Origin: Haplodiscus bocki
Taxonomy: Eukaryota
NCBI GenBank assembly: GCA_965655095.1
Contig: OZ296653.1
Span: forward strand, 71,734,001 to 71,798,000
Direction of reading: 5' to 3'
Length of the DNA: 64,000 nucleotides
Shown here: positions 2,541 to 37,700 of the stretch, one piece after another
Position numbering within the stretch: position 1 is the first letter of the stretch
Layout: each line of letters opens with the position of its first letter
Program-made: the position numbers and the translations under genes
The notes under the pieces: generated by a model
The model's input: only the letters and a program-made list of their open reading frames with translations
Told to the model about the DNA's origin: nothing
Database searches by the model: none

Positions 2541-2555
2541 TCGCTCTTATTTCAG
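2541..2555 (+). promoter_or_regulatory. 3' splice acceptor (cis or trans) 10 nt upstream of the zinc-finger start codon
   Basis: TCGCTCTTATTTCAG|G ends at 2555: a pyrimidine tract plus TTTCAG. A candidate donor AA|GTAAGC lies at 1889. Confidence 0.6.
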
Positions 2556-2565
2556 GGTGTTTGTA

Positions 2566-14000: not shown

Positions 14001-15039
14001 AAATTTTGATCCAAATATTTTCAACTTTCCAAAATATTCCTCTAAATTGGACGGTCACTTTAGCTTTTGGGGCTTTGTTTTGTGTAGTTTGGTGAAGCAG
14101 ATGCGCCTTCTCTAGCTACCATCTTTTATATACTAATGTTGTTCAACTGTAATCGGGTTGTCAGTTTCCAAAAACTTTGTTCATTTCAATTGCTCAGCCA
14201 TACCGAATATCAGTTGAAAATTTTTGACAAATCATCAATTGTTTAAAAGAAGTGATCTCGTTCGTGTGCAAAATCAACTTGGTCTCTAATTTAGTCGGCG
14301 CTTTGCGAATAATTGAACGTGCGAGAGTACTAAAGAGGCTTTTTTCGTTTGGTGGACGAAGCTGAAGTCGATATAATTCTCTCGCAAAAGAGAAAGGGTC
14401 TTTATGAAAGGCTGAATCCTGCACCTTACAGAGGAGCACATCAAAACGTGAAAACAGCGTACTTATATGGGAGAAAGATTTGAGCCTTCGCTCCAATTTT
14501 TTCTCGTGAAACCTGCCTTCCATATAGCGACAATTTTTGCGAAAAGATTTATCATTTATTTCTGAAGTAAACGCTTACCCAGGCAGTGAATTTTGAATCA
14601 TTGAATGACTCTTGTTTTTTGACGCTTTCTAGCAGTTTTTTCAAAGACAAAAGATTTTACCATATTTTTGTTGGAGAAGTAAGTTTCCTCAAACAACAGA
14701 CTAGATATTTGCTGGATTTTTTTCGTGCTTTGCGTGCGGCGCCGACTTACTTGAGCTGTTCCCGTGTTTCTGTCGCAAAACTCTGGCGGATAGCGGAGTT
14801 CTTTTCCTAGACTTCACCGATGAGACGCAAAGTGAAGACAAGACAATGTAGTGGTTTTGCACAGACATCCTAATCGGTAATAAATAAAAGTGATCTTCCT
14901 GGCGATTATATAGCCTACAGGTAGCTGGTTAGAATCCCTCTACGAACACTCTTTTGGCTGCTCTTTTACAAATTCTGAATTTTCTGGCCGAAAATTTCTA
15001 TAGGAACAATCTCTACTTTTCCGCTTTTGTTTTAATTCG

Positions 15040-15594
15040 AGCCCTAACCGAACACAAGTGAATTGCAAAACTTTTGCCATGGGAACCTGAGCGGTGGGCC
15101 AAATAGGGCAACTAGTAATGATTTCTCCGGGCTTTTAATCCCTTTTGCTCACGAAGTACCAGTGGGAAATCCAGCAAGATCTCAGCCGACAATTTTTACA
15201 TCAATTGTTAAACATTTAGGGTGTTGGTCCAAGCATGCAAAGCCTGATGGGCCAAAAAGGCAACCAATTGAGTTTTTGATGCTATCTCTCGGCATTGACA
15301 CTCACTTTCTTCAAAAACTAACTGTTGGAGTTCTTCCATCTAGAGATCGAAGCAAACTTGTTCACTTGTAGAAGGGTTTTCAGTATCAATATTTTAAATT
15401 TTGTGCCTCGTATCGGAACCTTCAGAACTGGGAAAGCCAACGAAAGGGACAGCTGAATTTTCTCGCTGTTCAAACTCGATGCCCGCCAGAAGTAACGATT
15501 GGATTTCTTTTATCAGGAGAACAATAACCTGATTTTTTACTTCCAGAAAATCATTCCCTTTCAAGATATTGCATTTTTGGTTTTTGCGTCGTCT
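15040..15594. repeat. Diverged monomers of the same ~167-bp family as the HOR array (transition layer)
   Basis: TGTTGGTCCAAGCATGCAAAGCCTGATGGGCCAAAAAG (~15222) versus array TTTTGGTCCTTGCATGGAAAACCACATGGGCCTCAAAAG. Also CTTTTGCCATGGGAACC...GGGCCAAA (~15071) and TTTTGTGCCTCGTATCGGAACC (~15399). Anchor spacing 156, 177, 185, continuing into the array. Confidence 0.7.
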
Positions 15595-16743
15595 CCTCTG
15601 AAACCTGATTGGCGAAGAAAAGCTATGAATTCGACTATCAAATGAATTTTCTTGACATTGAGATTCTTTCTCATTGAAGCAGACATTTGGATATCTTACA
15701 TCGGGGTGTCAAACGATATTTGTTGACTCGTAGACCGTTCTTTCGATATTTTCATTCTTATGCCTTGAACCGAAATCCTCAGTAGCTGAGATGGCCGACG
15801 CTGGAAAAAGAACCCGATTTCCTCCACAATTAGCGGTTGAATCTTCCCGATCAAACTGAGAATAGACAAATAGCTTCTCTCAGCAAGTTTTTCCAGTTCA
15901 ATGTTTTGGTCCTTGCAGGGAAAACCACATGGGCCTCAAAAGTGTAAGATTTCATTTTGTAAAGCTTTTCTGTGGTACAGAGTCACTTTTGACCTAAATA
16001 TCGATTGATTTTCTGCCGTCCTTATCTCAACCGAAACTTTCAGTACTGGAAGTTCGCTCAATATCAATATCTCCTGCTCTTTCCCTGCGTCGAAAAATTG
16101 ACGAACTGTAAATGAAATTGGTGATGAATTGTTTTACATTCAAAAGCTCCTGCAAATGTACAGTTTGCTTTGTGTCCTTAACTTTTCAATAAACACCCTT
16201 ATACTTCCAAAAGATTTGTCTCTTTGCACCTTGCATCCTGAACATGTGCCTCAAATGCAGAACATTTTGTTTTGTTATTTCCTTTTGTTCTACTAATTCA
16301 CAATCTGACTGAATTTCCGGTTGATTTTCAGCTGTCTAAGACTTAACGAAACTTGATCGCTTGTAGGATTTCTATCAGTTTCAATTTTTTCCTCAGTTTT
16401 GTGTATAGGAAACTTAATGTGCCGAAAAAAAGTTATTTTTCTTCGATTTTTAAACAAGTTCCTGCATAGGTACCGGTGGCATTTCTCCCATTAAGATTTG
16501 AATCATCGGGTATATGCTGGCGAAGTTTTTCTCACTGAATGTTTTTCTGGGTTTTCTTCTTTCTATCGAAAAGCTTCAGTGGCACTTCACAAAACTGTGC
16601 AATAATTATCTTTCGTCGTTACTTAATTTCGATTTCCTTCAAAGCCAAGTTCGTCGCTTTCTTTGGTCAATGTCTCAAGTAACAGATTTCTAACGGCTGA
16701 AATCTTTCAACACGGGCATTCAGGGTTCAGGTTGTGGCCTCCG
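15595..16743. repeat. Edge HOR copy carrying a ~521-bp internal deletion (about 3 monomers)
   Basis: Unit length 1143 versus ~1669. The junction GATTTGTCT-CTTTG-CACCTTGCA at 16222-16226 joins positions equivalent to 17368 and 17889 of the next copy. Confidence 0.9.
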
Positions 16744-19700
16744 AAACCTGATTGGTGAAGAAAAGCGATGAATTCGACTATCAAATGAATTTTCTTGACA
16801 TTGAGACTCTTTCTCATCGAAGCACACCTTTGGATATCTTACATCAGGGTGTCAAACGATATTTGTTGACTCGTAGACCGTTCTTTCGATATTTTCATTC
16901 TTATGCCTCGAACCGAAATCCTCAGTAGCTGAGATGACCGACGCTGGAAAAAGAACCCGATTTCTTCCACAATTAACGGTTGAATCTTCTCTATCAAAGT
17001 GATAATAGACAAATAGCTTCTCTCAGCAAGTTTTTAAAGTTGAATGTTTTGGTCCTTGCATGGAAAACCACAAGGGCCGCAAAAGTGTAAGATTTCAATT
17101 TGTAAAGTTTTTTTTTGTGGTACAGAGTCACTTTTGACCTAAAATATCGATTGATTGTCTGCCGTCCCTATCTCAACCGAAACTCTCAGTACTGGAAGTT
17201 CGCTCAATATCAATATCTCCTGCTCTTTCTCTGCGTCGAAAAATTGACGAACCGTAAATGAAATTAGTGATGAATTGTTTTATATTCAAAAGCTCCTGCA
17301 AATGTACAGTTTGCTTTGTCTCCTCAACTTTTCAATAAACACCCTTATACTTGCAAAAGATTTGTCTCTATGTATTATCTTCTGTTTTGTTCCTTTTTTG
17401 GGAAACCTTCGGTCGAACTTTTTCAAAAGTGAAACTAGTAATTATTTCGGTCGATGCTCACTTTCAATCTAAGAATCCATCGGTGTCGCGTTTTTTTTTT
17501 AAATTTCTAGTGACAGAGTTTTACTACCTGAACGTTTTCAACCTTGACAGGTTAGTTTTCGGTCATGGCATCTATATAAGATTGACCGATCAGGTCGCAA
17601 GTTTTGATTTTCAGTGTTTTTGCTCGCAATCCGAAATCACTTTCCAAAATTAACGATTATATTTGTTGCATCAAGGTCTGCAAGAAAACTTGTCCTCTTG
17701 GAGAGCCTGTGTTCTATCAAAGTTTTTGGTTTTCTGCCTTGCTTCAGAGACATTACAATGTAAAAAGGCTCCAAGTGAAAACCTTTTTTTGATTTTCAAG
17801 CGCATCCTTCAAAAGTAAAGGTTGGAATCGCTCGATCAAAGTGACAGAAAAATAATTGCTACATCCAGCACGGCTGTCCCTTTCGATGCTTTGCACCTTG
17901 CATTCCGAACATCTGCCTCAAATGCAGAACATTTTGTTTTGTTATTGCCTTTCGTTTTACTAACTCAAATTCTGACTGAATTTCCGGTTGATTTTCAGCC
18001 GTCTATGATTCACCGAAACTTGATCGCTTGTAGGAATTCTATCAGTATCAACGTTTTCCTCAGTTTTCTGTATCGGAAACTTGATGTGCCGAAAAATTGA
18101 GTTATTTTTCTTCGATTTTTAAACAAGTTCCTGCATAGGTACCGGTGGAATTTCTCCCATTAAGGTTTGAATCATCGGGTATATGCTGGCGAAATTTTTC
18201 TCACTGAATGTTTTTCTGGGTTTTCTTCTTTCTATCGGAAAGCTTCAGTGGCACTTCACAAAACTGTGCAATAATTATCTTTCGTCGTTACTGAATTTCG
18301 ATTTCCTCCTAAGCCAAGGTCGCCGCTTTCTTTGGTCGAGGTCTCCGGTGACAGATTTCTAACGGCTCAAATTTTTCAACACGAACATTCTGGGTTGAGG
18401 TTGTGGCCTCCGAAACCTGATTGGCGAAGAAAAGCTATGAATTCGACTATCAAATGAATTTTCTTGACATTGAAACTCTTTCTCGTCGAAGCAGACATTT
18501 GGATATCTTACAGCAGGGTGTCAAACGATATTTGTTGACTCATAGACCGTTCTTTCGATATTTTCATTCTTATGTTTTGAACCGAAATCCTCAGTAGCTG
18601 AGATGACCGACGCTGGAAAAAGAACCCGATTTCCTCCACAACTGACGGTTGAATCTTCTCGATCAAAGTGATAATAGACAAATAGCTTCTCTCAGCAAGT
18701 TATTCCAGTTGAATGTTTTGGTCCTTGCATGGAAAACCACAAGGGCCGCAAAAGTGTAAGATTTCTTTTTGTAATGCTTTTTTTGTCGTACAGAGTCACT
18801 TTTGACCTAAAATATCGATTGATTGTCTGCCGTCCCTATCTCAACCGAAACTCTCAGTACTGGAAGTTCGCTCAATATCAATATCTCCTGCTCTTTCTCT
18901 GCGTCGAAAAATTGACGAACCGTAAATAAAATTAGTGATGAATTGTTTTATATTCAAAAGCTCCTGCAAATGTACAGTTTGCTTTGTCTCCTCAACTTTT
19001 CAATAAACACCCTTATACTTGCAAAAGATTTGTCTCTATGTATTATCTTCTGTTTTGTTCCTTTTTTGGGAAACCTTCGGTCAAACTTTTTCAAAAGTGA
19101 AACTAGTAATTATTTCGGTCGATGCTCACTTTCAATCTAAGTATCCATCGGTGTCGCGTTTTTTTAAAAAATTTCTAGTGACAGAGTTTTACTACCTGAA
19201 CGTTTTCAACCATGACAGGTTAGTTTTCGGTCATGGCATCTATATAAGATTGACCGATCAGGTCGCAAGTTTTGATTTTCAGTGTTTTTGCTCGCAATCC
19301 GAAATCACTTTCCAAAATTAACGATTAGATTTGTTGCATCAAGGTCTGCAAGAAAACTTGTCCTCTTGGAGAGCCTCTGTTCTATCAAAGTTTTTGGTTT
19401 TCTGCCTTGCTTCAGAGACATTACAATGTAAAAAGGCTCCAAGTGAAAACCTTTTTTTGATTTTCAAGCGCATCCTCCAAAAGTAAAGGTTGGAATCGCT
19501 CGATCAAAGTGACAGAAAAATAATTGCTACATCCAGCACGGCTGTCCCTTTCGATGCTTTGCACCTTGCATTCCGAACATCTGCCTCAAATGCAGAACAT
19601 TTTGTTTTGTTATTGCCTTTCGTTTTACTAACTCACATTCTGACTGAATTTCCGGTTGATTTTCAGCCGTCTATGATTCACCGAAACTTGATCGCTTGTA

Positions 19701-22700
19701 GGAATTCTATCAGTATCAACGTTTTCCTCAGTTTTCTGTATCGGAAACTTGATGTGCCGAAAAATTGAGTTATTTTTCTTCGATTTTTAAACAAGTTCCT
19801 GCATAGGTACCGGTGGAATTTCTCCCATTAAGATTTGAATCATCGGGTATATGCTGGCGAAATTTTTCTCACTGAATGCTTTTCTGGCTTTTCTTCTTTC
19901 TTTCGGAAAGCTTCAGTGGCACTTCACAAAACTGTGCAATAATTATCTTTCGTCGTTACTGAATTTCGATTTCCTCCAAAGCCAAGTTCATCGCTTTCTT
20001 TGGTCAAGGTCTCAAGTGACAGATTTCTAACGGCTGAAATCTTTCAACACGGGCATTCAGGGTTCAGGTTGTGGCCTCCGAAACCTGATTCGTGAAGAAA
20101 AGCTATGAATTCGACTATCAAATGAATTTTCTTCACATTGAGACTCTTTCTCATCGAAGCAGACCTTTGGATATCTTACATCAGGGTGTCAAACGATATT
20201 TGTTGACTCGTAGACCGTTCTTTCGATGTTTTCATTCTTATGCCTTGAACCGAAATCCTCAGTAGCTGACATGGCCGACGCTGGAAAAAGAACCCGATTT
20301 CCTCCACAACTAACGCTTGAATCTTCTCGATCAAAGTGATAAAAGACAAATAGCTTCTCTCAGCAAGTTTTTCCAGTTGAATGTTTTGGTCCTTGCATGG
20401 AAAACCACAAGGGCCGCAAAAGTGTAAGATTTCTATTTTTAATGCTTTTTTTTGTGGTACAGAGGCACTTTTGACCTAAAATATCGATTGATTGTCTGCC
20501 GTCCCTATCTCAACCGAAACTCTCAGTACTGGAAGGTCTTTCAATATCAATATCTCCTGCTCTTTCCCTGCGTGGGAAAATTGACGAACCGTAAATGAAA
20601 TTAGTGATGAATTGTTTTATATTCAAAAGCTCCTGCAAATGTACAGTTTGCTTTGTGTCCTTAACTTTTCAGTAAACACCCTTATACTTCCAAAAGATTT
20701 GTCTCTGTGTATTATCTTCTGTTCTGTTCCTTTTATGGGAATCCTTGGGTCAAATTTTTTCGAAAGTGAAACTAGTAGTTATTTCGGTCGATGCTCATTT
20801 TCAATCTAAGAATCCATCGGTGTCGCGTTTTTTCTTTAAATTTCGAGTGACAGAGTTTTACTACCTGAACGTTTTCAACCTTGACAGGTTAGCTTTCGGT
20901 CATGGCATCTATATAAGATTGACCGATCAGGTCAAAAGTTTTGATTTTCAGTGTTTTTGCTCGCAATCCGAAATCACTTTCCAAAATTAACCATTAGTTT
21001 TGTTGCATCAAGGTCTGCAAGAAAACTTGTCCTCTTGGAGAGCCTGTGTTCTATCAAAGTTTTTGGTTTTCTGCCTTGCTTCAGAGACCTTACAATGTAA
21101 AAAGGCCTCCAAGTGAAAACCTTTTTTTTGATTTTCAAGCGCATCCTCCAAAAGTAAAGGTTGGAATCGCTCGATCAAAGTGACAGAAGAATAATTGCTA
21201 CTTCCAGCACGGCTGTCCCTTTCGATGCTTTGCACCTTGCATTCCGAACATGTGCCTCAAATGCAGAACTTTTTGTTTTGCTACTGCCTTTCGTTTTACT
21301 AACTCACATTCTGACTGAATTTCCGGTTGATTTTCAGCCGTCTAAGATTCACCGAAACTTGATCGCTTGTAGGAATTCTATCAGTATCAACGTTTTCTTC
21401 AGTTTTCTGTATCGGAAACTTGATGTGCCGAAAAATTGAGTTATTTTTCTTCGATTTTTAAACAAGTTCCTGCATAAGTACCGGTGGAATTTCTCCCATT
21501 AAGATTTGAATCATCGGGTATATGCTGGCGAAACTTTTCTCAGTGAATGTTTTTCTGGGTTTTCTTTTTCTTTCGGAAAGCTTCAGTGGCACTTCACAAA
21601 ACTGTGCAATAATTTTCTTTCGTCGTTACTGAATTTCCATTTCCTTCAAAGCCAAGTTCATCGCTTTCTTTGGTCAAGGTCTCAAGTTACAGATTTCTAA
21701 CGGCTGAAATCTTTCAACACGGGCATTCAGGGTTCAGGTTGTGGCCTCCGAAACCTGATTGGTGAAGAAAGCTATGAATTCGACTATCAAATGAATTTTC
21801 TTGACATTGAAACTCTTTCTCGTCGAAGCAGACATTTGGATATCTTACACCAGGGTGTCAAACGATATTTGTTGACTCGTAGACCGTTCTTTCGATATTT
21901 TCATTCTTATGCCTCGAACCGAAATCCTCAGTAGCTGAGATGACCGACGCTGGAAAAGGAACCTGATTTCCTCCACAATTAACGGTTGAATCTTCTCTAT
22001 CAAAGTGATAATAGACAAAAAGCTTCTCTCAGCAAGTTTTTCCAGTTGAATGTTTTGGTCCTTGCATGGAAAACCACAAGGGCCGCAAAAGTGTGCGATT
22101 TCATTTTGTAATGCTTTTTTGTGGTACAGTCACTTTTGACCTAAAATATCGGTTGATTGTCTGCCGTCCCTATCTCAACCGAAACTCTCAGTACTGGAAG
22201 GTCTTTCAATATCAATATCTCCTGCTCTTTCCCTGCGTGGGAAAATTGACGAACCGTAAATGAAATTAGTGATGAATTGTTTTATATTCAAAAGCTCCTG
22301 CAAATGTACAGTTTGCTTTGTCTCCTTAACTTTTCAATAAACACCCTTATACTTGCAAAAGATTTGTCTCTATGTATTATCTTCTGTTCTGTTCCTTTTT
22401 TGGGAAACCTTCGGTCAAACTTTTTCAAAAGTGAAACTAGTAATTATTTCGGTCGATGCTCACTTTCAATCTAAGAATCCATCGGTGTCGCGTTTTTTCT
22501 TTAAATTTCGAGTGACAGAGTTTTACTACCTGAACGTTGTCAACCTTGACAGGTTAGTTTTCGGTCATGGCATCTATATAAGATTGACCGATCAGGTCAA
22601 AAGTTTTGATTTTCAGTGTTTTTGCTCGCAATCCGAAATCACTTTCCATAATTAACGATTAGTTTTGTCTCATCAAGGTCTGCAAGAAAACTTGTCCTCT

Positions 22701-25700
22701 TGGAGAGCCTGTGTTCTATCAAAGTTTTTGGTTTTCTGCCTTGCTTCATAGACCTTACAATGTAAAAAGGCCTCCAAGTGAAAACATTTTTTTGATTTTC
22801 AAGCGCATCCTCCAAAAGTAAAGGTTGGAATCGCTCGATCAAAGTGACAGAAAAATAATTGCTACTTCCAGCACGGCTGTCCCTTTCAATGCTTTGCTCC
22901 TTGCATTTTTGAACATGTGCCTCAAATGGAGAATATTTTTTTTCCTTTCGTTCCACTAACTCACATTCTGACTGAATTTCCGGTTGATTTTCAGCCGTCT
23001 AAGACTCATCGAAACTTGATCGCTTGTAGTATTTCTATCAGTATCATTATTTTCCTCAGTTTTTTGTATCGGAAACTTGATGTGCCGAAAAAATGAGTTA
23101 ATTTTCTTCGATTTTTAAACAAGTACCTGCATAGGTACCGGTGGAATTTCTCCCATTAGGATTTGAATCATCGGGTATATGCTGGCGAAGTTTTTCTGAT
23201 TGAATATTCTTCTTGGTTTTCTTCTTTCTATCGGAAAGCTTCAGTGGCACTTCACAAAACTGTGCAATAATTTTCTTTCGTCGTTACTGAATTTCCATTT
23301 TCTTCAAAGCCAAGTTCATCGCTTTCTTTGGTCAAGGTCTCAAGTTACAGATTTCTAACGGCTGAAATCTTTCAACACGGGCATTCAGGGTTCAGGTTGT
23401 GGCCTCCGAAACCTGATTGGTGAAGAAAGCTATGAATTCGACTATCAAATGAATTTTCTTGACATTGAAACTCTTTCTCGTCGAAGCAGACATTTGGATA
23501 TCTTACACCAGGGTGTCAAACGATATTTGTTGACTCGTAGACCGTTCTTTCGATATTTTCATTCTTATGCCTTGAACCGAAATCCTCAGTAGCTGAGATG
23601 ACCGACGCTGGAAAAGGAACCTGATTTCCTCCACAATTAACGGTTGAATCTCGATCAAAGTGATAATAGACAAATAGCTTCTCTCAGCAAGTTTTTCCAG
23701 TTGAATGTTTTGGTCCTTGCATGGAAAACCACAAGGGCCGCAAAAAAGTGAGATTTCAATTCGTATTACTTTTTTTGTGCTACAGAGTCACTTTTGACCT
23801 AAAATATCGGTTGATTGTCTGCCGTCCCTATGTCAACCGAAACTCTCAGTACTGGAAGGTCTTTCCTTATCAATATCTCCTGCTCTTTCCCTGCGTCGGA
23901 AAGTTGACGAACCGTAAATGAAATTAGTGATGAATTGTTTTATATTCAAAAGCTCCTGCAAATGTACAGTTTGCTTTGTCTCCTTAACTTTTCAATAAAC
24001 ACCCTTATACTTGCAAAAGATTTGTCTCTATGTATTATCTTCTGTTTTGTTCTTTTTATGGGAAACCTTGGGTCAAACTTTTTCAAAAGTGAAACTAGTA
24101 ATTATTTCGGTCGATGCTCACTTTCAATCTAAAAATCCATCGGTGTCGCGTTTTTTCTTTTCGAGTGACAGAGTTTTACCACCTGAACGTTTTCAACCTT
24201 GACAGGTTAGTTTTTGGTCATGGCATCTATATAAGATTGACCGATCAGGTCGCAAGTTTTGATTTTCAGTGTTTTTGCTGGCAATCCGAAATCACTTTCC
24301 AAAATTAACGATTAGTTTTGTTGCATCGAGGTCTGCAAGAAAACTTGTCCTCTTGGAGAGCCTGTGTTCTATCAAAGTTTTTGGCTTTCTGCCTTGCTTC
24401 AGAGACCTTACAATGTAAAAAGGCCTCCAAGTGAAAACATTTTTTTGATTTTCAAGCGCATCATCCAAAAGTAACGGTTGGAATTGTTCGATCAAAAAGA
24501 CAAAATAAAAATTGCTACTTCCAGCACGGCTGTCCCGTTCAATGCTTTGCTCCTTGCATTTTTGAACATGTGCCTCAAATGCAGAATATTTTGTTTAATT
24601 TCCTTTCGTTCCACTAACTCACATTCTGACTGAATTTCCGGTTGATTTTCAGCCGTCTAAGACTCACCGAAACTTGATCGCTTGTAGGATTTCTATCAGT
24701 ATCAATATTTTCCTCAGTTTTCTGTATCGGAAACTTGATGTGCCGAAAAAATGAGTTATTCTTTCTCCGATTTTTAAACAAGTTCCTGCATAGGTACCGG
24801 TGGAATTTCTCCCATTAAGATTTGAATCATCGGGTATATGCTGGCGAAATTTTTCTCACTGATTATTTATCTGGGTTTTCTTCTTTCTATCGGAAAGCTT
24901 CAGTGGCACTTCACAAAACTGTGCAAGAATTTTCTTTCGTCGTTACTGAATTTCGATTTCCTCCAAAGCCAAGTTCGTCGCTTTCTTTGGTCAAGATCTC
25001 AAGTGACAGATTTCTAACGGCTGAAATCTTTCAACACGGGCATTCAGGGTTCAGGTTGTGGCCTCCGAAACCTGATTGGTGAAGAAAAGCTATGAGTTCG
25101 ACTATCGAATGAATTTTCTTGACATTGAGACTCTTTCTCATCGAAGCAGACATTTAGATATCTTACATCAGGGTGTCAAGCGATATTTGTTGACTCGTAG
25201 ACCCTTCTTTCGATATTTTCATTCTTATGCCTTGAACCGAAATCCTCAGTAGCTGAGATGGCCGACGCTGGAAAAAACCCGATTTTCTCCGCGATTAACG
25301 GTTGAATCTTCTCGATCAAAGTGATAGTAGACAAATAAAATCTCTCAGCAAGTTTTTCCAGTTGAATGTTTTGGTCCTTGCATGGAAAACCACAAGGACC
25401 GCAAAAGTGTAATATTTCAATTTTTAATGCTTTTTTTTGTGGTAAAGTGTCACTTTTGACCTAAAATATCGATTGATTGTCTGCCGTCCTTATCTCAACC
25501 GAAACTCTCAGTACTGGAAGGTCTTTCAATATCAATATCTCCTGCTCTTTCCGTGCGTCGGAAAATCGACGAACTGTAAATGAAATTAGTGATTAATTGT
25601 TTTATATTCAAAAGCTCCTGCAAATGTACAGTTTGCTTTGTGTCCTTAACTTTTCGTTAAACACCCTTATACTTGCAAAAGATTTGTCTCTATGTATTAT

Positions 25701-28700
25701 CTTCTGTTTTGTTTCTTATATGGGAAAACTTGGGTCAAATTTTTTCAAAAGTGAAACTAGTAAATATTTCGGTCGATGCTCACTTTCAATCTAAGAATCC
25801 ATCGGTGTCGCGTTTTTTCATTAAATTTCGAGTGACAGTTTTACTACCTGAACGTTGTCAACCTTGACAGGTTAGTTTTCGGTCGTGGCATCTATTTAAG
25901 ATTGACCGATCAAGCCACAAGTTTTGATTTTCAGTGTTTTTTCTCGCAATCCAAAATCACTTTCCAAACTTAACGATTACATATTTTGCATCAAGGTCTG
26001 CAAGAAAACTTGTCCTCTTGGAGAGCCTGTGTTCTATCAAAGTTTTTGGTTTTCTGCCTTGCTTCAGAGACCTTACAATGTAAAAAGGCCTCCAAGTGAA
26101 AACATTTTTTTGATTTTAAAGCGCATCCTCCAAAAGTAACGGTTGGAATTGTTCGATCAAAAAGACAAAATAAAAATTGCTACTTCCAGCACGGCTGTCC
26201 CTTTCAATGCTTTGCTCCTTGCATTTCTGAACATGTGCCTCAAATGCAGATTATTTTGTTTTATTTCCTTTCGTTCCACTAACTCACATTCTGACTGAAC
26301 TTCCGGTTGATTTTGAGCCGTCTAAGACTCACCGAAACTTGATCGCTTGTAGGATTTCTATCAGTATCAATATTTTCCTCAGTTTTCTGTATCGGAAACT
26401 TGATGTGCCGAAAAAATGAGTTATTTTTTCTTCGATTTTTGAACAAGTTCCTGCATAGGTACCGGTGGCATTTCTCCCATTAAGATTTGAATCATCGGGT
26501 ATATGATGGCGAAATTTTTCTCACTGAATGTTTTTCTGGGTTTTCTTCTTTCTATCGGAAAGCTTCAGTGGCACTTCACAAAACTGTGCAATAATTATTT
26601 TTCGTCGTTACTGAATTTCGATTTCCTCCAAAGCCAAGTTCGTCGCTTTCTTTGGTCAAGATCTCAAGTGACAGATTTCTAACGGCTGAAATCTTTCAAC
26701 AGGGGCATTCAGGGTTCAGGTTGTGGCCTCCGAAACCTGATTGGTGAAGAAAAGCTATGAGTTCGACTATCGAATGAATTTTCTTGACATTGAGACTCTT
26801 TCTCATCGAAGCAGACATTTAGATATCTTACATCAGGGTGTCAAGCGATATTTGTTGACTCGTAGACCCTTCTTTCGATATTTTCATTCTTATGCCTTGA
26901 ACCGAAATCCTCAGTAGCTGAGATGGCCGACGCTGGAAAAAACCCGATTTTCTCCGCGATTAACGGTTGAATCTTCTCGATCAAAGTGATAGTAGACAAA
27001 TAAAATCTCTCAGCAAGTTTTTCCAATTGAATGTTTTGGTCCTTGCATGGAAAACCACAAGGACCGCAAAAGTGTAATATTTCAATTTTTAATGCTTTTT
27101 TTTGTGGTAAAGTGTCACTTTTGACCTAAAATATCGATTGATTGTCTGCCGTCCTTATCTCAACCGAAACTCTCAGTACTGGAAGGTCTTTCAATATCAA
27201 TATCTCCTGCTCTTTCCGTGCGTCGGAAAATCGACGAACTGTAAATGAAATTAGTGATTAATTGTTTTATATTCAAAAGCTCCTGCAAATGTACAGTTTG
27301 CTTTGTGTCCTTAACTTTTCGTTAAACACCCTTATACTTGCAAAAGATTTGTCTCTATGTATTATCTTCTGTTTTGTTTCTTATATGGGAAAACTTGGGT
27401 CAAATTTTTTCAAAAGTGAAACTAGTAAATATTTCGGTCGATGCTCACTTTCAATCTAAGAATCCATCGGTGTCGCGTTTTTTCATTAAATTTCGAGTGA
27501 CAGTTTTACTACCTGAACGTTGTCAACCTTGACAGGTTAGTTTTCGGTCGTGGCATCTATTTAAGATTGACCGATCAAGCCACAAGTTTTGATTTTCAGT
27601 GTTTTTTCTCGCAATCCAAAATCACTTTCCAAACTTAACGATTACATTTGTTGCATCAAGGTCTGCAAGAAAACTTGTCCTCTTGGAGAGCCTGTGTTCT
27701 ATCAAAGTTTTTGGTTTTCTGCCTTGCTTCAGAGACCTTACAATGTAAAAAGGCCTCCAAGTGAAAACATTTTTTTGATTTTAAAGCGCATCCTCCAAAA
27801 GTAACGGTTGGAATTGTTCGATCAAAAAGACAAAATAAAAATTGCTACTTCCAGCACGGCTGTCCCTTTCAATGCTTTGCTCCTTGCATTTCTGAACATG
27901 TGCCTCAAATGCAGATTATTTTGTTTTATTTCCTTTCGTTCCACTAACTCACATTCTGACTGAACTTCCGGTTGATTTTGAGCCGTCTAAGACTCACCGA
28001 AACTTGATCGCTTGTAGGATTTCTATCAGTATCAATATTTTCCTCAGTTTTCTGTATCGGAAACTTGATGTGCCGAAAAAATGAGTTATTTTTTCTCCGA
28101 TTTTTAAACAAGTTCCTGCATAGGTACCGGTGGAATTTCTCCCATTAAGATTTGAATCATCGGGTATATGCTGGCGAAATTTTTCTCACTGAATAATATT
28201 CTGGGTTTTCTTCTTTCTATCGGAAAGCTTCAGCGGCACTTCACGAAACTGTGCAAGAATTATCTTTCGTCGTTACTGAATTTCGATTTCCTCCAAAGCC
28301 AAGTTCGTCGCTTTCTTTGGTCAAGATCTCAAGTGACAGATTTCTAACGGCTGAAATCTTTCAACACGGGCATTCAGGGTTCAGGTTGTGGCCTCCGAAA
28401 CCTGATTGGTGAAGAAAAGCTATGAGTTTGACTATCAAATGAATTTTCTTGACATTGAGACTCTTTCTCATCGAAGCAGACATTTAGATATCTTAAATCA
28501 GGGTGTCAAACGGTATTTGTTGACTCGTAGACCCTTCTTTCGATATTTTCATTCTTTTGCCTTGAACCAAAATCCTCAGTAGCTGAGATGGCCGACGCTG
28601 GAAAAAACACGATTTCCTCCACGATTAACGGTTGAATCTTCTCGATCAAAGTGATAATAGACAAATAGCTTCTCTCAGCAAGTTTTTCCAGTTGAATGTT

Positions 28701-31700
28701 TTGGTCCTTGCAGGGAAAACCACATGGGCCTCAAAAGTGTAAGATTTCAAATTGTAATGTTTTTTTGTGGTACAGAGTCACTTTTGACCTAAATATCGAT
28801 TGATTTTCTGCCGTCCTCATCTCAACCGAAACTCTCAGTACTGGAAGGTCTTTCAATATCATTATCTCCTGCTCTTTCCCTGCGTCGGAAAATCGACGAA
28901 CTGTAAATGAAATTAGTGATTAATTGTTTTATATTCAAAAGCTCCTGCAAATGTACAGTTTGCTTTGTGTCCTTAACTTTTCGTTAAACACCCTTATACT
29001 TGCAAAAGATTTGTCTCTTTGTATTGTGTTCTGTTTTGTTCCTTTTATGGGAGACCTTGGGTCAAACTTTTTCAAAAGTGAAACTAGTAATTATTCCGGT
29101 CGATGCTCACTTTCAATCTAAGAATCCATCGGTGTCGCGTTTTTTCTTTAAATTTCGAGTGACAGAGTTTTACTACCTGAACGTTGTCAAACTTGACAGG
29201 TTAGTTTTCGGTCGTGGCATCTATAAAAGATTGACCGATCAAGCCACAAGTTTTGATTTTCAGTGTTTTTTCTCGCAATCCAAAATCACTTTCCAAACTT
29301 AACGATTACATTTGTTGCATCAAGGTCTGCAAGAAAACTTGTCCTCTTGGAGAGCCTGTGTTCTATCAAAGTTTTTGGTTTTCTGCCTTGCTTCAGAGAC
29401 CTTACAATGTAAAAAGGCCTCCAAGTGAAAACATTTTTTTGATTTTCAAGCGCATCCTCCAAAAGTAACGGTTGGAATTGTTCGATCAAAAAGACAAAAT
29501 AAAAATTGCTACTTCCAGCACGGCTGTCCCTTTCAATGCTTTGCTCCTTGCATTTCTGAACATGTGCCTCAAATGCAGATTATTTTGTTTTATTTCCTTT
29601 CGTTCCACTAACTCACATTCTGACTGAACTTCCGGTTGATTTTGAGCCGTCTAAGACTCACCGAAACTTGATCGCTTGTAGGATTTCTATCAGTATCAAT
29701 ATTTTCCTCAGTTTTCTGTATCGGAAACTTGATGTGCCGAAAAAATGAGTTATTCTTTCTCCGATTTTTAAACAAGTTCCTGCATAGGTACCGGTGGAAT
29801 TTCTCCCATTAAGATTTGAATCATCGGGTATATGCTGGCGAAATTTTTCTCACTGAATAATATTCTGAGTTTTCTTCTTTCTATCGGAAAGCTTCAGCGG
29901 CACTTCACGAAACTGTGCAAGAATTATCTTTCGTCGTTACTGAATTTCGATTTCCTCCAAAGCCAAGTTCGTCGCTTTCTTTGGTCAAGATCTCAAGTGA
30001 CAGATTTCTAACGGCTGAAATCTTTCAACACGGGCATTCAGGGTTCAGGTTGTGGCCTCCGAAACCTGATTGGTGAAGAAAAGCTATGAGTTCGACTATC
30101 GAATGAATTTTCTTGACATTGAGACTCTTTCTCATCGAAGCAGACATTTAGATATCTTACATCAGGGTGTCAAGCGATATTTGTTGACTCGTAGACCCTT
30201 CTTTCGATATTTTCATTCTTATGCCTTGAACCGAAATCCTCAGTAGCTGAGATGGCCGACGCTGGAAAAAACCCGATTTTCTCCGCGATTAACGGTTGAA
30301 TCTTCTCGATCAAAGTGATAATAGACAAATAACTTCTCTCAGCAAGTTTTTCCAGTTGAATGTTTTGGTCCTTGCATGGAAAACCACAAGGGCCGCAAAA
30401 ATGTAATATTTCAATTTTTAATGCTTTTTTGTGGTAAAGTGTCACTTCTGACCTAAAATATCGATTGATTGTATGCCGTCCCTATCTCAACCGAAACTCT
30501 CAGTACTGGAAGGTCTTTCAATATCAATATCTCCTGCTCTTTCTCTGCGTCGGAAAATTGACGAACCGTAAATGATATTAGTGATGAATTGTTTTATATT
30601 CAAAAGCTCCTGCAAATGTAGTTTGCTTTGTCTCCTTAACTTTTCAATAAACACCCTTATACTTGCAAAAGAATTGTCTCTATGTATTATCTTCTGTTTT
30701 GTTCCTTTTATGGGAAACCTTGGGTTAAACTTTATCAAAAGTGAAACTAGTAATTATTTCGGTCGATGCTCACTTTCAATCTAAGAATCCATCGGTGTCC
30801 CGTTTTTCCTTTAAATTTCGATTGACAGAGTTTTAATACCTGAACGTTGGCAACCTTGACAGGTTAGTTTTCGGTCGTGGCATCTATATTAGGTTGACCG
30901 ATCAAGCCACAAGTTTTGACTTTCAGTGTTTATTCTCGCAATCCAAAATCACTTTCCAAACTTAACGATTACATTTGTTGCATCAAGGTCTGCAAGAAAA
31001 CTTGTCTTTTTGGAGAGCCTGTGTTCTATCAAAGTTTTTGGTTTTCTGCCTTGCTTCAGAGACCTTACAATGTAAAAAGGCCTCCAAGTGAAAACATTTT
31101 TTTGATTTCCAAGCGCATCCTCCAAAAGTATCGGTTGGAATTGTTCGATCAAAAAGACAAAATAAAAATTGCTACTTCCAGCACGGCTGTCCCGTTCAAT
31201 GCTTTGCTCCTTGCATTTTTGAACATGTGCCTCAAATGCAGAATATTTTGTTTTATTTCCTTTCGTTCCACTAACTCACATTCTGACTGAATTTCCGGTT
31301 GATTTTCAGCCGTCCAAGACTTAACGAAACTTGATCGCTGGTAGGATTTCTATCAGTATCAATATTTTCCTCAGTTTTCTGTATCGGAAACTTGATGTGC
31401 CGAAAAATTGAGTTAGTCTTTCTCCGATTTTTAAACAAGTTCCTGCATAGGTACCGGTGGAATTTCTCACATTAAGATTTGAATCATCGGGTATATGCTG
31501 GCGAAATTTTTCTCACTGAATATTTATTGGGTTTTCTTCTTTCTATCGGAAAGCTTCAGCGGCACTTCACGAAACTGTGCAAGAATTATCTTTCGTCGTT
31601 ACTGAATTTCGATTTCCTCCAAAGCCAAGTTCGTCGCTTTCTTTGGTCAAGATCTCAAGTGACAGATTTCTAACGGCTGAAATCTTTCAACACGGGCATT

Positions 31701-34700
31701 CAGGGTTCAGGTTGTGGCCTCCGAAACCTGATTGGTGAAGAAAAGCTATGAGTTCGACTATCGAATGAATTTTCTTGACATTGAGACTCTTTCTCATCGA
31801 AGCAGACATTTAGATATCTTACATCAGGGTGTCAAGCGATATTTGTTGACTCGTAGACCCTTCTTTCGATATTTTCATTCTTATGCCTTGAACCGAAATC
31901 CTCAGTAGCTGAGATGGCCGACGCTGGAAAAAACCCGATTTTCTCCGCGATTAACGGTTGAATCTTCTCGATCAAAGTGATAGTAGACAAATAAATTCTC
32001 TCAGCAAGTTTTTCCGGTTGAATGTTTTGGTCCTTGCATGGAAAACCACAAGGGCCGCAAAAGTGTAATATTTCAATTTTTAATGCTTTTTTTTGTGGTA
32101 AAGTGTCATTTTTGACCTAAAATATCGATTGATTGTCTGCCGTCCTTATCTCAACCGAAACTCTCAGTACTGGAAGGTCTTTCAATATCAATATCTCCTG
32201 CTCTTTCCCTGCGTCGGAAAATCGACGAACTGTAAATGAAATTAGTGATGAATTGTTTTATATTCAAAAGCTCCTGCAAATTTAGTTTGCTTTGTCTCCT
32301 TAACTTTTCAATAAACACCGTTATACTTGCAAAAGAATTGTCTCTATGTATTATCTTCTGTTTTGTTCCTTTTATGGGAAACCTTGGGTCAAACTTTTTC
32401 AAAAGTGAAACTAGTAAATATTTCGGTCGATGCTCACTTTCAATCTAAGAATCCATCGGTGTCGCGTTTTTTCTTTAAATTTCGAGTGACAGAGTTTTAC
32501 TACCTGAACGTTGTCAACCTTGACAGGTTAGTTTTCGGTCGTGGCATCTATTTAAGATTCACCGATCAAGCCACAAGTTTTGATTTTCAGTGTTTTTTCT
32601 CGCAATCCAAAATCACTTTCCAAACATAACGATTATAGTTGTTGCATCAAGGTCTGCAAGAAAACTTGTCCTCTTGGAGAGCCTGTGTTCTATCAAAGTT
32701 TTTGGTTTTCTGCCTTGCTTCAGAGACCTTACAATGTAAAAAGGCCTCCAAGTGAAAACATTTTTTTGATTTTCAAGCGCATCCTCCAAAAGTAACGGTT
32801 GGAATTGTTCGATCAAAAAGACAAAATAAAAATTGCTACTTCCAGCACGGCTGTCCCTTTCAATGCTTTGCTACTTGCATTTCTGAACATGTGCCTCAAA
32901 TGCAGATTATTTTGTTTTATTTCCTTTCGTTCCACTAACTCACATTCTGACTGAATTTTCGGTTGATTCTCAGCCTTCTAAGACTCACGGAAACTTGATC
33001 GCCTGTAGGATTTCTATCAGTATCATTATTTTCCTCAGTTTTCCGTATCGGAAACTTGATGTGCCGATAAAATGGAGTTATTCTTTCCGATTTTTAAACA
33101 AGTTGCTGCATAGGTACCGGTGGAATTTCTCCCATTAAGATCTGAGTCATCGGGTATATGCTGGCGAAATTTTTCTTTACTGAATGTTTTTCTGGGTTTT
33201 CTTCTTTCTATCGGAAAGCTTCAGTGGCACTTCACAAAACTGTGCAATGATTATTTTTCGTCGTTACTGAATTTCGATTTCCTCCTAAGCCAAGGTCGTC
33301 GCTTTCTTTGGTCGAGGTCTCAAGTGACAGATTTCTAACGGCTGAAATTTTTCAACACGGACATTCTGGGTTCAGGTTGTGGCCTCCGAAACCTGATTGG
33401 TGAAGAAAAGCTATGAGTTTGACTATCAAATGAATTTTCTTGACATTGAGACTCTTTCTCATCGAAGCAGACATTTAGATATCTTAAATCAGGGTGTCAA
33501 ACCGTATTTGTTGACTCGTAGACCCTTCTTTCGATATTTTCATTCTTATGCCCTGAACCGAAATCCTCAGTAGCTGAGATGGCCGACGCTGGAAAAAACA
33601 CGATTTCCTCCACGATTAACGGTTGAATCTTCTCGATCAAAGTGATAATAGACAAATAACTTCTCTCAGCAAGTTTTTCCAGTTGAATGTTTTGGTCCTT
33701 GCATGGAAAACCACAAGGGCCGCAAAAGTGTAATATTTCAATTTTTAATGCTTTTTTTTGTGGTAAAGTGTCACTTCTGACCTAAAATATCGATTGATTG
33801 TATGCCGTCCCTATCTCAACCGAAACTCTCAGTACTGGAAGGTCTTTCAATATCAATATCTCCTGCTCTTTCTCTGCGTCGGAAAATTGATGAACCGTAA
33901 ATGATATTAGTGATGAATTGTTTTTTATTCAAAAGCTCCTGCAAATGTAGTTTGCTTTGTCTCCTTAACTTTTCAATAAACACCCTTATACTTGCAAAAC
34001 AATTGTCTCTATGTATTATCTTCTGTTTTGTTCCTTTTATGGGAAACCTTGGGTCAAACTTTTTAAAAAGTGAAACTAGTAATTATTTCGGTCGATGCTC
34101 ACTTTCAATCTAAGAATCCATCGGTGTCGCGTTTTTTTCAAAGAAATTTCGAGTGACATAGTTTTACTACATGAACGTTTTCAGCCTTGACAGGTTAGTT
34201 TTTGGTCGTGGCATCTATATAAGATTGACTGATCAAGCCACAATTTTTGATTTTCAGTGTCTTTCCTCGCAATCCAAATTCACTTTCCACAATTAACTAT
34301 TAGATTTGTTGCATCATGGTCTGCAAGAAAACTTGTCCTCTTGGAGAGCCTTTGTTCTATCAAAGTTTTTGGTTTTTATGCCTTGCTTTAGAGAGCTTAC
34401 AATGTAAAAAGGCCTCCAAGTGAAAACCTTTCTTTGATTTTCAAGCGCATCCTCCAAAAGTAACGGCTGGAATTGTTCGATCAAAGTGACAGAAAAATAA
34501 TTGCTACTTCCAGCACGGCTGTCCCTTTCGATGCTTTGCACCTTGCATTCCGAACATGTGCCTCAAATGCAGAACATTTTGTTTTATTATTGCCTTTCGT
34601 TCCACTAACTCACATTCTGACTGAACTTCCGGTTGATTTTGAGCCGTCCAAGACTCACCGAAACTTGATCGCTTGTAGGATTTCTATCAGTATCAATATT

Positions 34701-37700
34701 TTCCTCAGTTTTCTGTATCAGAAACTTTGATGTGCCGAAAAAATGAGTTTTTTCTCAGATTTTTAAACAAGTTCCTGCATAGGTACCGGTGGAATTTCTC
34801 CCATTAAGATTTGAATCATCGGGTATATGCTGGCGAAATTTTTCTCACTGAATAATATTCTGGGTTTTCTTCTTTCTATCGGAAAGCTTGAGCGGCACTT
34901 CACGAAACTGTGCAAGAATTATCTTTCGTCGTTACTGATTTTCGATTTCCTCCAAAGCCAAGTTCGTCGCTTTCTTTGGTCAAGATCTCAAGTGACAGAT
35001 TTCTAACGGCTGAAATCTTTCAACAAGGGCATTCAGGGTTCAGGTTGTGGCCTCCGAAACCTGATTGGTGAAGAAAAGCTATGAGTTCGACTATCGAATG
35101 AATTTTCTTGACATTGAGACTCTTTCTCATCGAAGCAGACATTTAGATATCTTACATGAGGGTGTCAAGCGATATTTGTTGACTCGTAGACCCTTCTTTC
35201 GATATTTTCATTCTTATGCCTTGAACCAAAATCCTCAGTAGCTGAGATGGCCGACGCTGGAAAAAACCCGATTTTCTCCGCGATTAACGGTTGAATCTTC
35301 TCGATCAAAGTGATATTAGACAAATAACTTCTCTCAGCAAGTTTTTCCAGTTGAATGTTTTGGTCCTTGCATGGAAAACCACAAGGGCCGCAAAAGTGTA
35401 ATATTTCAATTTTTAATGCTTTTTTTTTGTGGTAAAGTGTCACTTCTGACCTAAAATATCGATTGATTGTATGCCGTCCCTATCTCAACCGAAACTCTCA
35501 GTACTGGAAGGTCTTTCAATATCAATATCTCCTGCTCTTTCTCTGCGTCGGAAAATTGACGAACCGTAAATGAAATTCGTGATGATTTGTTTTATATTCA
35601 AAAGCTCCTGCAAATGTACAGTTTGCTTTGTGTCCTTAACTTTTCGATAAACACTCTTATACTTGCAAAAGATTTGTCTCTTTGTATTGTCTTCTGTTTT
35701 GTTCCTTTTATGGGAAACCTTGGGTCAAACTTTTTCAAAAGTGAAGCTAGTAATTATTTCGGTCGATGCTCACTTTCAATCTAAGAATCCATCGGTGTCG
35801 CGTTTTTTCTTTAAATTTCGAGTGACAGAGTTTTACTACCTGAACGTTGTCAACCTTGACAGGTTAGTTTTCGGTCGTGGCATCTATATAAGGTTGACCG
35901 ATCAAGCCACAAGTTTTGATTTTCAGTGTTTTTTCTCGCAATCCAAAATCACTTTCCAAACTTATCGATTATATTTGTTGCATCAAGGTCTGCAAGAAAA
36001 CTTGTCTTTTTGGAGAGCCTGTGTTCTATCAAAGTTTTTGGTTTTCTGCCTTGCTTCAGAGACCTTACAATGTAAAAAGGCCTCCAATTGAAAACATTTT
36101 TTTGATTTTCAAGCGCATCCTCCAAAAGTAACGGTTGGAATTGTTCGATCAAAAAGACAAAATAAAAAATGCTACTTCCAGCACGGCTGTCCCGTTCAAT
36201 GCTTTGCTCCTTGCATTTTTGAACATATGCCTCAAATGCAGAATATTTTGTTTTATTTCCTTTCGTTCCACTAACTCACATTCTGACTGAACTTCCGGTT
36301 GATTTTGAGCCGTCTAAGACTCACCGAAACTTGATCGCTTGTAGGATTTCTATCAGTATCAATGTTTTCCTCAGTTTTCTGTATCGGAAACTTGAAGTGC
36401 CGAAAAAATGAGTTATTTTTTCTCCGATTTTCAAACAAGTTCCTGCATAGGTACCGGTGGAATTTCTCCCATTAAGATTTGAATCATCGGGTATATGCTG
36501 GCGAAATTTTTCTCACTGAATAATATTCTGGGTTTTCTTCTTTCTATCGGAAAGCTTCAGCGGCACTTCACGAAACTGTGCAAGAATTATCTTTCGTCGT
36601 TACTGAATTTCGATTTCCTCCAAAGCCAAGTTCGTCGCTTTCTTTGGTCAAGATCTCAAGTGACAGATTTCTAACGGCTGCAATCTTTAAACACGGGAAT
36701 TCAGGGTTCAGGTTCTGGCCTCCGAAACCTGATTGGTGAAGAAAAGCTATGAGTTCGACTATCGAATGAATTTTCTTGACATTGAGACTCTTTCTCATCG
36801 AAGCAGACATTTAGATATCTTACATCAGGGTGTCAAGCGATATTTGTTGACTCGTAGACACTTCTTTCGATATTTTCATTCTTATGCCTTGAACCGAAAT
36901 CCTCAGTAGCTGAGATGGCCGACGCTGGAAAAAACCCGATTTTCCCCGCGATTAACGGTTGAATCTTCTCGATCAAATTGATAATAGACAAATAACTTCT
37001 CTCAGCAAGTTTTTCCAGTTGAAAGTTTTGGTCCTTGCATGGAAAACCACAAGGGCCGCAAAAGTGTAATATTTCAATTTTTAATGCTTTTTTTTGTGGT
37101 AAAGTGTCACTTCTGACCTAAAATATCGATTGATTGTATGCCGTCCCTATCTCAACCGAAACTCTCAGTACTGGAAGGTCTTTCAATATCAATATCTCCT
37201 GCTCTTTCTCTGCGTCGGAAAATTGACGAACCGTAAATGATATTAGTGATGAATTGTTTTGTATTCAAAAGCTCCTGCAAATGTAGTTTGCTTTGTCTCC
37301 TTAACTTTTCAATAAACACCCTTATACATGCAAAACAATTGTCTCTATGTAATATCTTCTGTTTTGTTCCTTTTATGGGAAACCTTGGGTCAAACTTTTT
37401 CAAAAGTGAAACTCGTAATTATTTCGGTCGATGCTCACTTTCAATCTAAGAATCCATCGGTGTCGCGTTTTTTCTTTAAATTTCGAGTGACAGAGTTTTA
37501 CTACCTGAACGTTGTCAACCTTGACAGGTTAGTTTTCGGTCGTGGCATCTATATAAGGTTGACCGATCAAGCCACAAGTTTTGATTTTCAGTGTTTTTTC
37601 TCGCAATCCAAAATCACTTTCCAAACTTATCGATTACATTTGTTGCATCAAGGTCTGCAAGAAAACTTGTCTTTTTGGAGAGCCTGTGTTCTATCAAAGT

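What the first reader, a model, noticed from the sequence alone, without database searches (positions are those of the whole stretch)
16975..18731. The 1.67-kb unit is a hidden 10-mer higher-order repeat of ~167-bp (nucleosome-length) monomers
Seen: a degenerate anchor of form TTTTnnTCCTTGCATCGGAAAC recurs in one unit at 17062, 17237, 17401, 17571, 17745, 17906, 18074, 18236, 18411, 18583 and 18731. Spacings are 175, 164, 170, 174, 161, 168, 162, 175, 172, 148 (sum 1669, mean ~167). A second anchor TAACGGTTGAAT-like follows the same phase in several monomers (16974, 17144, 17305, 17816, 17982, 18140). Monomers are very diverged from one another while whole units are near-identical, which defines a HOR. 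Established: 150-180-bp monomers organised as HORs typify centromeric satellites (e.g. primate 171-bp alpha satellite). Inference: a candidate centromeric or pericentromeric satellite with an unusually deep hierarchy.
Basis: partly seen in the sequence, partly recalled or inferred. Interest (0 to 1): 0.85.

Follow-up and report, generated by a model that had tools for sequence, protein, structure and literature searches.

The report
Fossil ten-monomer satellite repeat, coral
A long stretch of non-coding repeat DNA in what earlier scan notes call a coral genome has a 1.67-kb unit built from ten very old, badly eroded copies of a ~167-bp piece, a layout like human centromere DNA, but nothing here shows that it works as a centromere.

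Summary
From about 15,600 to the window end, a 1.67-kb unit repeats head to tail: 28 full copies plus partial ones, 92-99% alike.

- **Two halves.** Each unit is a dimer of ~835-bp halves (60.6% identity, E 6e-42).
- **Ten monomers.** Each half holds five ~167-bp monomers. They are only ~44% alike, against 37.5% for shuffled controls.
- **Why the period is hidden.** Tandem Repeats Finder misses it, and plain lag profiles show no peak at 167 itself.
- **Why it is real.** Independently, a diverged monomer outside the array matches four in-phase unit positions.

Repeat-register rearrangements also occur: a three-monomer deletion at the array edge and a half-unit recombinant in public reads.

The array shows no coding, RNA-family, ribozyme, dyad or 10-bp dinucleotide signal. 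The best reading is an ordinary non-coding satellite built by stepwise amplification, now homogenised only at the 1.67-kb level.

Centromere function is untested. The scan has already noted several similar hidden 158-180-bp satellites on other pieces of this genome, two of them confirmed by follow-up. This is a new member of a known kind.

The parts
15054..15600 (+). Relic edge of the array: three diverged monomers (e1 15055-15211, e2 15212-15388, e3 15389-15570), only ~50-60% identical to the colinear unit positions.
   Evidence: Monomer HMM hits at 15073-15559, E 1e-7 to 1e-18. Identity in 40-bp windows jumps from 50-68% to 92-100% at about 15,600. e2 scores Z 8.6-10.3 against m1, m4, m6 and m9.
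15595..16972 (+). Partial and rearranged units at the array start: m9-m10, then m10-m2 joined directly to m6-m10. Monomers m3-m5 are missing, in monomer register, with the junction at about 16222.
   Evidence: BLAST segments 15595-15829, 15834-16223 (unit 3-395) and 16222-16972 (unit 915-1667). The junction alignment shows a switch from the m2 end to the m6 start.
16975..63668 (+). 28 full 1.67-kb units (1658-1676 bp), head to tail. There are local blocks: units 1-4, units 5-18 (94-98% alike) and units 19-28 (96-99%).
   Evidence: Identity falls steadily with unit distance and shows no multi-unit super-repeat.
63669..64000 (+). Start of a further unit; the array runs off the window.
   Evidence: The same DNA lies on an ENA contig of 110,948 bp that extends about 36 kb past the window end; that part was not read.
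17037..17880 (+). First pentamer of the reference unit: m1 17037-17211, m2 17212-17375, m3 17376-17545, m4 17546-17719, m5 17720-17880.
Evidence: Held-out HMM tests.
17881..18705 (+). Second pentamer: m6 17881-18048, m7 18049-18210, m8 18211-18385, m9 18386-18557, m10 18558-18705.
   Evidence: Halves align at 60.6% over 791 columns, E 6e-42. Pairs m1/m6, m2/m7, m3/m8, m4/m9 and m5/m10 score Z 9.4, 9.2, 9.2, 5.7 and 5.2.

Best explanation
This is a non-coding tandem satellite whose 1.67-kb unit is a fossil, nested higher-order repeat. The inferred history has four steps.
1. A ~167-bp monomer was arrayed head to tail and diverged.
2. A block of five monomers (~835 bp) was amplified and diverged by about 40%. 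Positions 1 and 4 of this block are the same monomer subtype.
3. A block of two such pentamers (1.67 kb) was amplified.
4. Unequal exchange or gene conversion now homogenises the array only in the 1.67-kb register, and locally. Neighbouring units are therefore most alike, and blocks of 96-99% identity sit inside a 92-95% background.

Shown here: the three levels of similarity, the single orientation, the sharp edge with relic monomers, and rearrangements in repeat register. Inferred: the order of events and the recombination mechanism. The array has no detectable coding or RNA function. Any role would come from the chromatin it carries, which was not measured.
For: Levels of similarity:
- Units are 92-99% alike.
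- Halves are 60.6% alike, E 6e-42.
- Monomers are 44% alike against 37.5% for shuffled controls, and the similarity is phase-specific even with the anchor motif masked.
- Held-out profile tests are significant and in phase.

Layout:
- 294 consecutive monomers lie on one strand with mean spacing 166.7 bp.
- Relic monomers at 15054-15600 are followed by an abrupt jump to over 92% identity.
- Relic monomer e2 matches m1, m4, m6 and m9 at ~63% identity, which defines a monomer subtype at pentamer positions 1 and 4.

Recombination in register:
- The edge unit lacks m3-m5.
- Contigs of two public runs join m2 to m7 through a 22-nt m7-like stretch. That is an ~835-bp variant unit.
- Identity decays steadily with unit distance.

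No function signal:
- No ORF of 143 aa or more in the array, and no Pfam hit in four of its longest ORFs.
- No Rfam family at gathering score over 1-22000, or at E up to 10 over 12800-18800.
- No tRNA.
- Conservation is spread evenly along the monomer, as expected for neutral decay.
Against: - Monomer identity is close to the noise floor. Two of the ten monomers (m3, m6) are marginal and one (m9) gives no hit in the held-out test.
- Plain lag profiles show no peak at 167 bp itself.
- The order of amplification steps is inferred from divergence levels only. Gene conversion could distort those levels.
- Only one locus and one study's reads were seen, so genome-wide behaviour is unknown.
Confidence: 0.85

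Rival explanations
1. The array is, or directly borders, a functional centromere: the satellite carries CenH3/CENP-A nucleosomes, one per ~167-bp monomer, and its HOR structure results from centromere-associated recombination. This adds a function to the main explanation rather than replacing it.
For: - The monomer length falls in the 100-200-bp class that dominates candidate centromere satellites (bioRxiv 10.64898/2026.09.17.752431; PMC4053949).
- The array has a single orientation and a homogeneous interior with a diverged edge.
- Contig word depth is in the hundreds to thousands in the organism's own runs, which suggests many copies, but this is uncalibrated.
- The genome holds several satellites of this style on other pieces (unchecked scan notes).
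Against: - No measurement of chromatin or chromosomal position is available.
- GC content equals the flank.
- There is no conserved box within monomers, no 10-bp WW periodicity and no dyad-symmetry excess.
- The ~167-bp period is so eroded that it can no longer be under sequence-level constraint.
- An intronless 1260-aa ORF lies only ~9 kb from the array edge.
- Many satellites with HORs are not centromeric.
Confidence: 0.2
2. The ~167-bp monomer began as the internal tandem repeat of a mobile element, for example a hammerhead-ribozyme non-LTR retrozyme or a repeat-bearing MITE. The array would then be a transposon-derived satellite.
For: - Retrozyme tandem repeats are reported across animals, and that paper's survey included a coral genome (bioRxiv 10.64898/2026.07.22.740005).
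- The monomer consensus holds a superficial CTGATG...CGAAA string.
- Other satellites of this genome were traced to transposon or viral genes (unchecked notes).
Against: - Rfam covariance models find no hammerhead or other ribozyme, even at E up to 10.
- There is no room for a helix II between the two core-like strings.
- No inverted terminal repeats and no coding remnants were found.
- No homologue of an array ORF exists outside this contig among 5.8 billion proteins.
Confidence: 0.06
3. The 167-bp period is not real. It is a by-eye pattern produced by T-rich composition and a loose motif inside a plain 835-bp or 1.67-kb repeat.
For: - TRF finds nothing.
- There is no lag-167 peak in the k-mer or local-alignment profiles.
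- Monomer identity is only 7 points above shuffled controls.
- There is no compositional 167-bp periodicity.
Against: - The phase-specific similarity survives masking of the motif.
- Held-out monomers are recovered in phase against 1000 shuffles.
- Lag peaks at 2x and 3x the period combined with 5x imply the common divisor.
Confidence: 0.03

Closest known systems
Primate alpha-satellite higher-order repeats (171-bp monomers, regimented HORs of 2-46 monomers)
   Same: Both have a nucleosome-scale monomer, head-to-tail orientation, a block of n diverged monomers repeated at high identity, a diverged layer at the array edge, and structural variants that differ by whole monomers.
   Different: Monomers here are ~44% alike, against roughly 60-80% in alpha satellite as I recall it. 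Standard tools therefore miss them. HOR copies are 92-99% alike rather than 95-100%. The relic layer seen is only ~0.5 kb. No sequence relationship is expected and none was tested. Centromere function is shown for alpha satellite and not here.
HORs that have become new long monomers, such as the 343-bp New World monkey repeat whose halves are weakly related (PMC4053949, Figure 6d legend)
   Same: In both, an old multimer is now the only unit that homogenisation acts on, and its internal repeats are only weakly related.
   Different: Here there are two nested old levels (5-mer, then 10-mer) instead of one dimerisation, and the organism is a cnidarian according to scan notes.
Other kilobase satellites with hidden 158-180-bp monomers in the same genome (scan notes s1-381257, s1-381258, s1-359302, s1-369382, s1-382623)
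   Same: The architecture is the same: 1.4-1.8-kb units of 8-10 very diverged monomers, and one is also described as a dimer of halves.
   Different: They have different unit lengths and lie on other pieces.

Membership tests
Higher-order repeat (HOR) satellite | Long tandem array of one unit, head to tail | tested here: met
   28 full units plus partial ones, all on the plus strand, from about 15,600 to beyond 64,000.
Higher-order repeat (HOR) satellite | The unit consists of a whole number of homologous monomers in one orientation | tested here: met
   Ten monomers of 148-175 bp. Homology is shown by the phase scan, held-out HMMs and edge monomer e2.
Higher-order repeat (HOR) satellite | Identity between units far exceeds identity between monomers within a unit | tested here: met
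   Units are 92-99% alike. Monomers are ~44% alike, or 54% for i/i+5 pairs.
Centromeric satellite | Occupied by CenH3/CENP-A chromatin | not testable with these tools
   No ChIP or CUT&Tag data are available.
Centromeric satellite | Located at the primary constriction, usually as large arrays on most chromosomes | not testable with these tools
   The window's chromosomal position is unknown. The array is at least 48 kb here. Read-contig word depth of hundreds to thousands is uncalibrated.
Centromeric satellite | Supportive, non-defining sequence marks: a conserved protein-binding box, dyad symmetry, or AT enrichment | tested here: not met
   No clustered conservation, DNA folding z-score -0.93 with few inverted repeats, and GC 0.38 equal to the flank.
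Non-LTR retrozyme / hammerhead-ribozyme satellite | A type I hammerhead ribozyme in the tandem repeats | tested here: not met
   Rfam covariance models found no hammerhead family at E up to 10 over 12800-18800, both strands, and none at gathering score over 1-22000.

The most novel reading that the evidence does not exclude
This array may be one member of a genome-wide set of piece-specific kilobase satellites that all descend from one ~160-180-bp monomer library and mark the centromeres of this anthozoan. That would be an alpha-satellite-like centromere system with chromosome-specific, deeply eroded HORs in an early-branching animal. The literature held here names a cnidarian candidate centromere satellite only for Hydra (183 bp) and clustered arrays in Ricordea.
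Probability: 0.15. Interest if true: 0.6.

Novelty: new member of a known kind. Interest (0 to 1): 0.35.

Why it matters
The array is a clear case of how a satellite's basic period can be almost erased while the higher-order unit stays homogeneous. TRF and plain autocorrelation both miss the period. That matters for annotating the many supra-nucleosomal (201 bp to 5 kb) satellites now seen in large genome surveys, some of which may be eroded HORs of nucleosome-length monomers.

For this genome, it adds one more family to a recurring pattern of kilobase units hiding 158-180-bp monomers. A chromatin or cytogenetic experiment could test that pattern as a candidate centromere system in a cnidarian. 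On its own, the finding is ordinary satellite biology.

Tried and rejected
- **Plain period detection.** TRF found no array with period up to 500. K-mer and local-alignment lag profiles showed no 167-bp peak, only 330, 500 and 835.
- **Coding origin.** The array has no ORF longer than 142 aa, and four of the longest have no Pfam hit. Monomer lengths vary from 148 to 175 bp and are not multiples of three.
- **RNA genes.** There is no Rfam family at gathering score or at E up to 10, and no tRNA.
- **Hammerhead or retrozyme lead.** This came from a CTGATG...CGAAA string in the consensus. I rejected it on the covariance-model result and the lack of a helix II. The loose pattern search was uninformative.
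- **Conserved binding box.** Clustering of conservation does not exceed a column-permutation control.
- **Nucleosome and structure signals.** No 10-bp WW signal, no 167-bp compositional signal, and no dyad-symmetry excess.
- **Super-repeat of several units.** None found.
- **Relatives elsewhere.** A 20-mer invariant in all units gave one chance 28-bp match in metagenome contigs. An array ORF found only its own contig among 5.8 billion proteins. An exact-product look-up found nothing.
- **Reading past the window end.** My attempt to read the ENA contig beyond the window failed, because the called gene does not translate in the standard frame.
- **Flank repeat.** The ~163-bp repeat at 12921-13700 shows no relationship to the array monomer (HMM search; consensus comparison p = 0.12).
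- **RNA evidence.** No RNA run holds the sequence. This does not show that it is silent.

Full report
**The array**

Rearranged partial copies lie at 15595-16972, and a last partial copy runs off the window end.
- Units are 1658-1676 bp long and 92-99% identical in pairs.
- They fall into local blocks: units 1-4, units 5-18 (94-98%) and units 19-28 (96-99%).
- Identity falls steadily with the distance between units, and there is no repeat of several units above the 1.67-kb level.
- GC content is 0.37-0.39, the same as the flank. One strand is T-rich throughout.

**The half-unit level**

A sensitive self-BLAST aligns unit positions 1-767 with 843-1605 at 60.6% identity over 791 columns, E 6e-42. 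K-mer lag counts and a windowed local-alignment lag profile both peak at 833-836 bp. This also agrees with scan note s1-354096.

**The 167-bp level**

This level is not visible to ordinary tools. TRF (period up to 500) reports nothing. Lag profiles show weak peaks near 330 and 500 bp but none at 167 or 668. Four stronger tests show that the period is nevertheless real.

1. **Phase scan.** The mean global alignment score is -15.4 in phase and about -27 at all other phases. Because the anchors were chosen by eye, I then removed about 40 bp around each anchor. The in-phase peak remains, at -13.4 against about -21.5.

2. **Held-out profiles.** I built profile HMMs from eight monomers and used each to search the two monomers left out.
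   - Seven of ten held-out monomers scored above all, or all but one, of 1000 dinucleotide shuffles. Scores were 26.9 and 27.7 bits for m1 and m7, and 16.3 to 5.1 bits for m4, m10, m8, m5 and m2.
   - Every alignment was in phase.
   - m3 and m6 were marginal, and m9 gave no hit.

3. **An independent monomer.** The array is preceded by about 0.5 kb of diverged monomers (see the next section). The consensus unit matches the stretch around the second of these, e2, at four places, with E from 4e-9 to 1e-23 and ~63% identity. Brought to a common origin, those places are unit positions 64, 571, 902 and 1411.

4. **Tiling.** A monomer HMM tiles 15054-64000 into 294 consecutive plus-strand monomers with mean spacing 166.7 bp (range 145-181). 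There are no minus-strand hits.

Pairwise identity in a MAFFT alignment is 44% for monomers in general and 54% for i/i+5 pairs. Shuffled monomers treated the same way give 37.5%.

**A further level**

The relic monomer e2 scores Z 9.0, 8.9, 8.6 and 10.3 against m1, m4, m6 and m9, and 1.9-5.4 against the other monomers.
- Pentamer positions 1 and 4 are therefore one monomer subtype.
- This explains why lags of two and three monomers show up while lags of one and four do not.
- Positions 2 and 5 may be a second subtype (mean Z 3.2), but that is only suggestive.

**The array edge and rearrangements**

- **Sharp edge.** Identity to the colinear consensus is 50-68% up to about 15,600 and 92-100% beyond it. 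Relic monomers reach back to about 15,054, and nothing related is detectable further left.
- **Edge deletion.** The first near-complete unit lacks m3-m5. The switch from the end of m2 to the start of m6 falls at the monomer boundary.
- **Half-unit recombinant.** In Logan contigs of two runs from the organism's own study, one contig form joins m2 to m7 through 22 letters that resemble the m7 anchor. This removes five monomers and gives an ~835-bp variant unit that does not occur in the window.
- **Another junction.** In both runs a loose end also falls at the m9 anchor, at the same unit position.
- **Breakpoints.** Three junctions at or near monomer boundaries fit exchange in repeat register. 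Three cases are too few to call a hotspot.

**What it is not**

- **Not coding.** There is no ORF above 142 aa in the array and no Pfam match in four of its longest ORFs.
- **Not a known RNA.** There is no Rfam family and no tRNA.
- **Not a ribozyme repeat.** A resemblance of the monomer consensus to the hammerhead core made me test a retrozyme origin. Such repeats are reported across animals (bioRxiv 10.64898/2026.07.22.740005). The covariance models find nothing even at E up to 10, and there is no room for a helix II, so I rejected this.
- **No conserved box.** Conservation along the monomer is not clustered beyond a permutation control. The 'anchor' is therefore not a conserved box, and the pattern looks like neutral decay.
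- **No positioning signal.** There is no 10-bp WW periodicity, no compositional 167-bp signal, and no excess of dyad symmetry.
- **No CpG depletion.** CpG observed/expected is 0.97 in the array against 0.83 in the flank. CpG sites are no more variable between units than other sites.

**Mechanism**

The simplest history is stepwise amplification with divergence in between.
1. A 167-bp monomer array formed and diverged.
2. A five-monomer block was amplified, and its copies are now ~40% diverged.
3. A ten-monomer block was amplified, and its copies are now 1-8% diverged.
4. Homogenisation continues locally.

Jukes-Cantor distances are roughly over 1.0, 0.56 and 0.01-0.085 for the three levels, computed by hand from the identities. 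The levels of similarity and the in-register rearrangements are shown. Unequal crossing-over or gene conversion as the driver is inferred from established models of satellite evolution (PMC4053949; bioRxiv 10.64898/2026.09.17.752431).

**Comparison with what is known**

- HORs were seen in 76 of 171 species in Melters et al., which also describes HORs turning into new long monomers (PMC4053949).
- A 2026 survey of 325 genomes finds HORs prevalent in plants and animals, and 103 of 263 candidate centromere satellite families with 201 bp to 5 kb monomers.
- For cnidarians, the papers held here name only a 183-bp Hydra candidate and clustered arrays in Ricordea. My searches found no paper on coral HOR satellites.

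The structure is thus a new member of a known kind.

Earlier notes of this scan, which are unchecked AI notes, call the genome a coral. They list similar hidden 158-180-bp satellites on other pieces, two of them confirmed by follow-up agents. The scan has therefore found this kind before on other DNA of the same genome.

**Centromere reading**

Nothing here tests it. Length class, orientation and layering fit a centromere but are not specific to one. The negative sequence tests are not decisive either, since the survey finds that the primary sequence of centromere satellites is not constrained. I put a functional centromere role at about 0.2.

**Limits**

- Only one locus was read.
- Reads came from one study, probably the assembly's own source.
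- Contig word depths of hundreds to thousands suggest many copies but were not calibrated.
- The ENA contig that carries this DNA (110,948 bp) runs about 36 kb past the window, and I could not fetch that part.

Noticed in passing
window 12921-13700: A separate short tandem repeat of four to five ~163-bp monomers, 56-58% alike (self-BLAST E 3e-7). It has no detectable relationship to the array monomer (HMM search; consensus comparison p = 0.12). A second eroded repeat of the same length class therefore lies 1.4 kb from the array.
   Followed up: partly
window 2557-6339 (+): An intronless 1260-aa ORF about 9 kb from the array has no Pfam family. It has only two distant homologues (41% and 31% identity) among 5.8 billion proteins, both from ENA assemblies. 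Another scan note calls it a zinc-finger protein.
   Followed up: partly
window 50290-53632 (reads laid): Contigs of two runs join unit position ~259 (m2) to ~1119 (m7) through 22 m7-like letters. This is an ~835-bp five-monomer variant that is absent from the window. Its word depth is ~220-240, against the 400-1900 typical of array bins.
   Followed up: partly
window 16222; 51724/53396; 52219: Three independent junctions fall at or next to monomer boundaries or anchors: the edge deletion, a loose end shared by both runs, and the m2/m7 joint. This may be a preferred exchange site, but there are too few cases to tell.
   Followed up: no
window 15600-64000 vs 1-12900: CpG observed/expected is 0.97 in the array and 0.83 in the flank. 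CpG sites are no more variable between units than other sites, so there is no sign of methylation-driven decay in the array.
   Followed up: partly
window 48618-63668 (units 19-28): A unit of this more homogeneous block (20) shares 0.50-0.64 of its sampled 31-mers with the public runs. The first unit shares only 0.24-0.28. This suggests that the block-type variant is the more common form in the genome.
   Followed up: no
L003 (ENA contig ctg83714, inside the array): The ENA assembly's gene caller placed many 'genes' of 82-253 aa on both strands of the satellite. The one I checked (17679-18113, -) has 2 in-frame stops in standard translation, and the locus copy of P0004 does not translate to its query. 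These are probably spurious calls.
   Followed up: no
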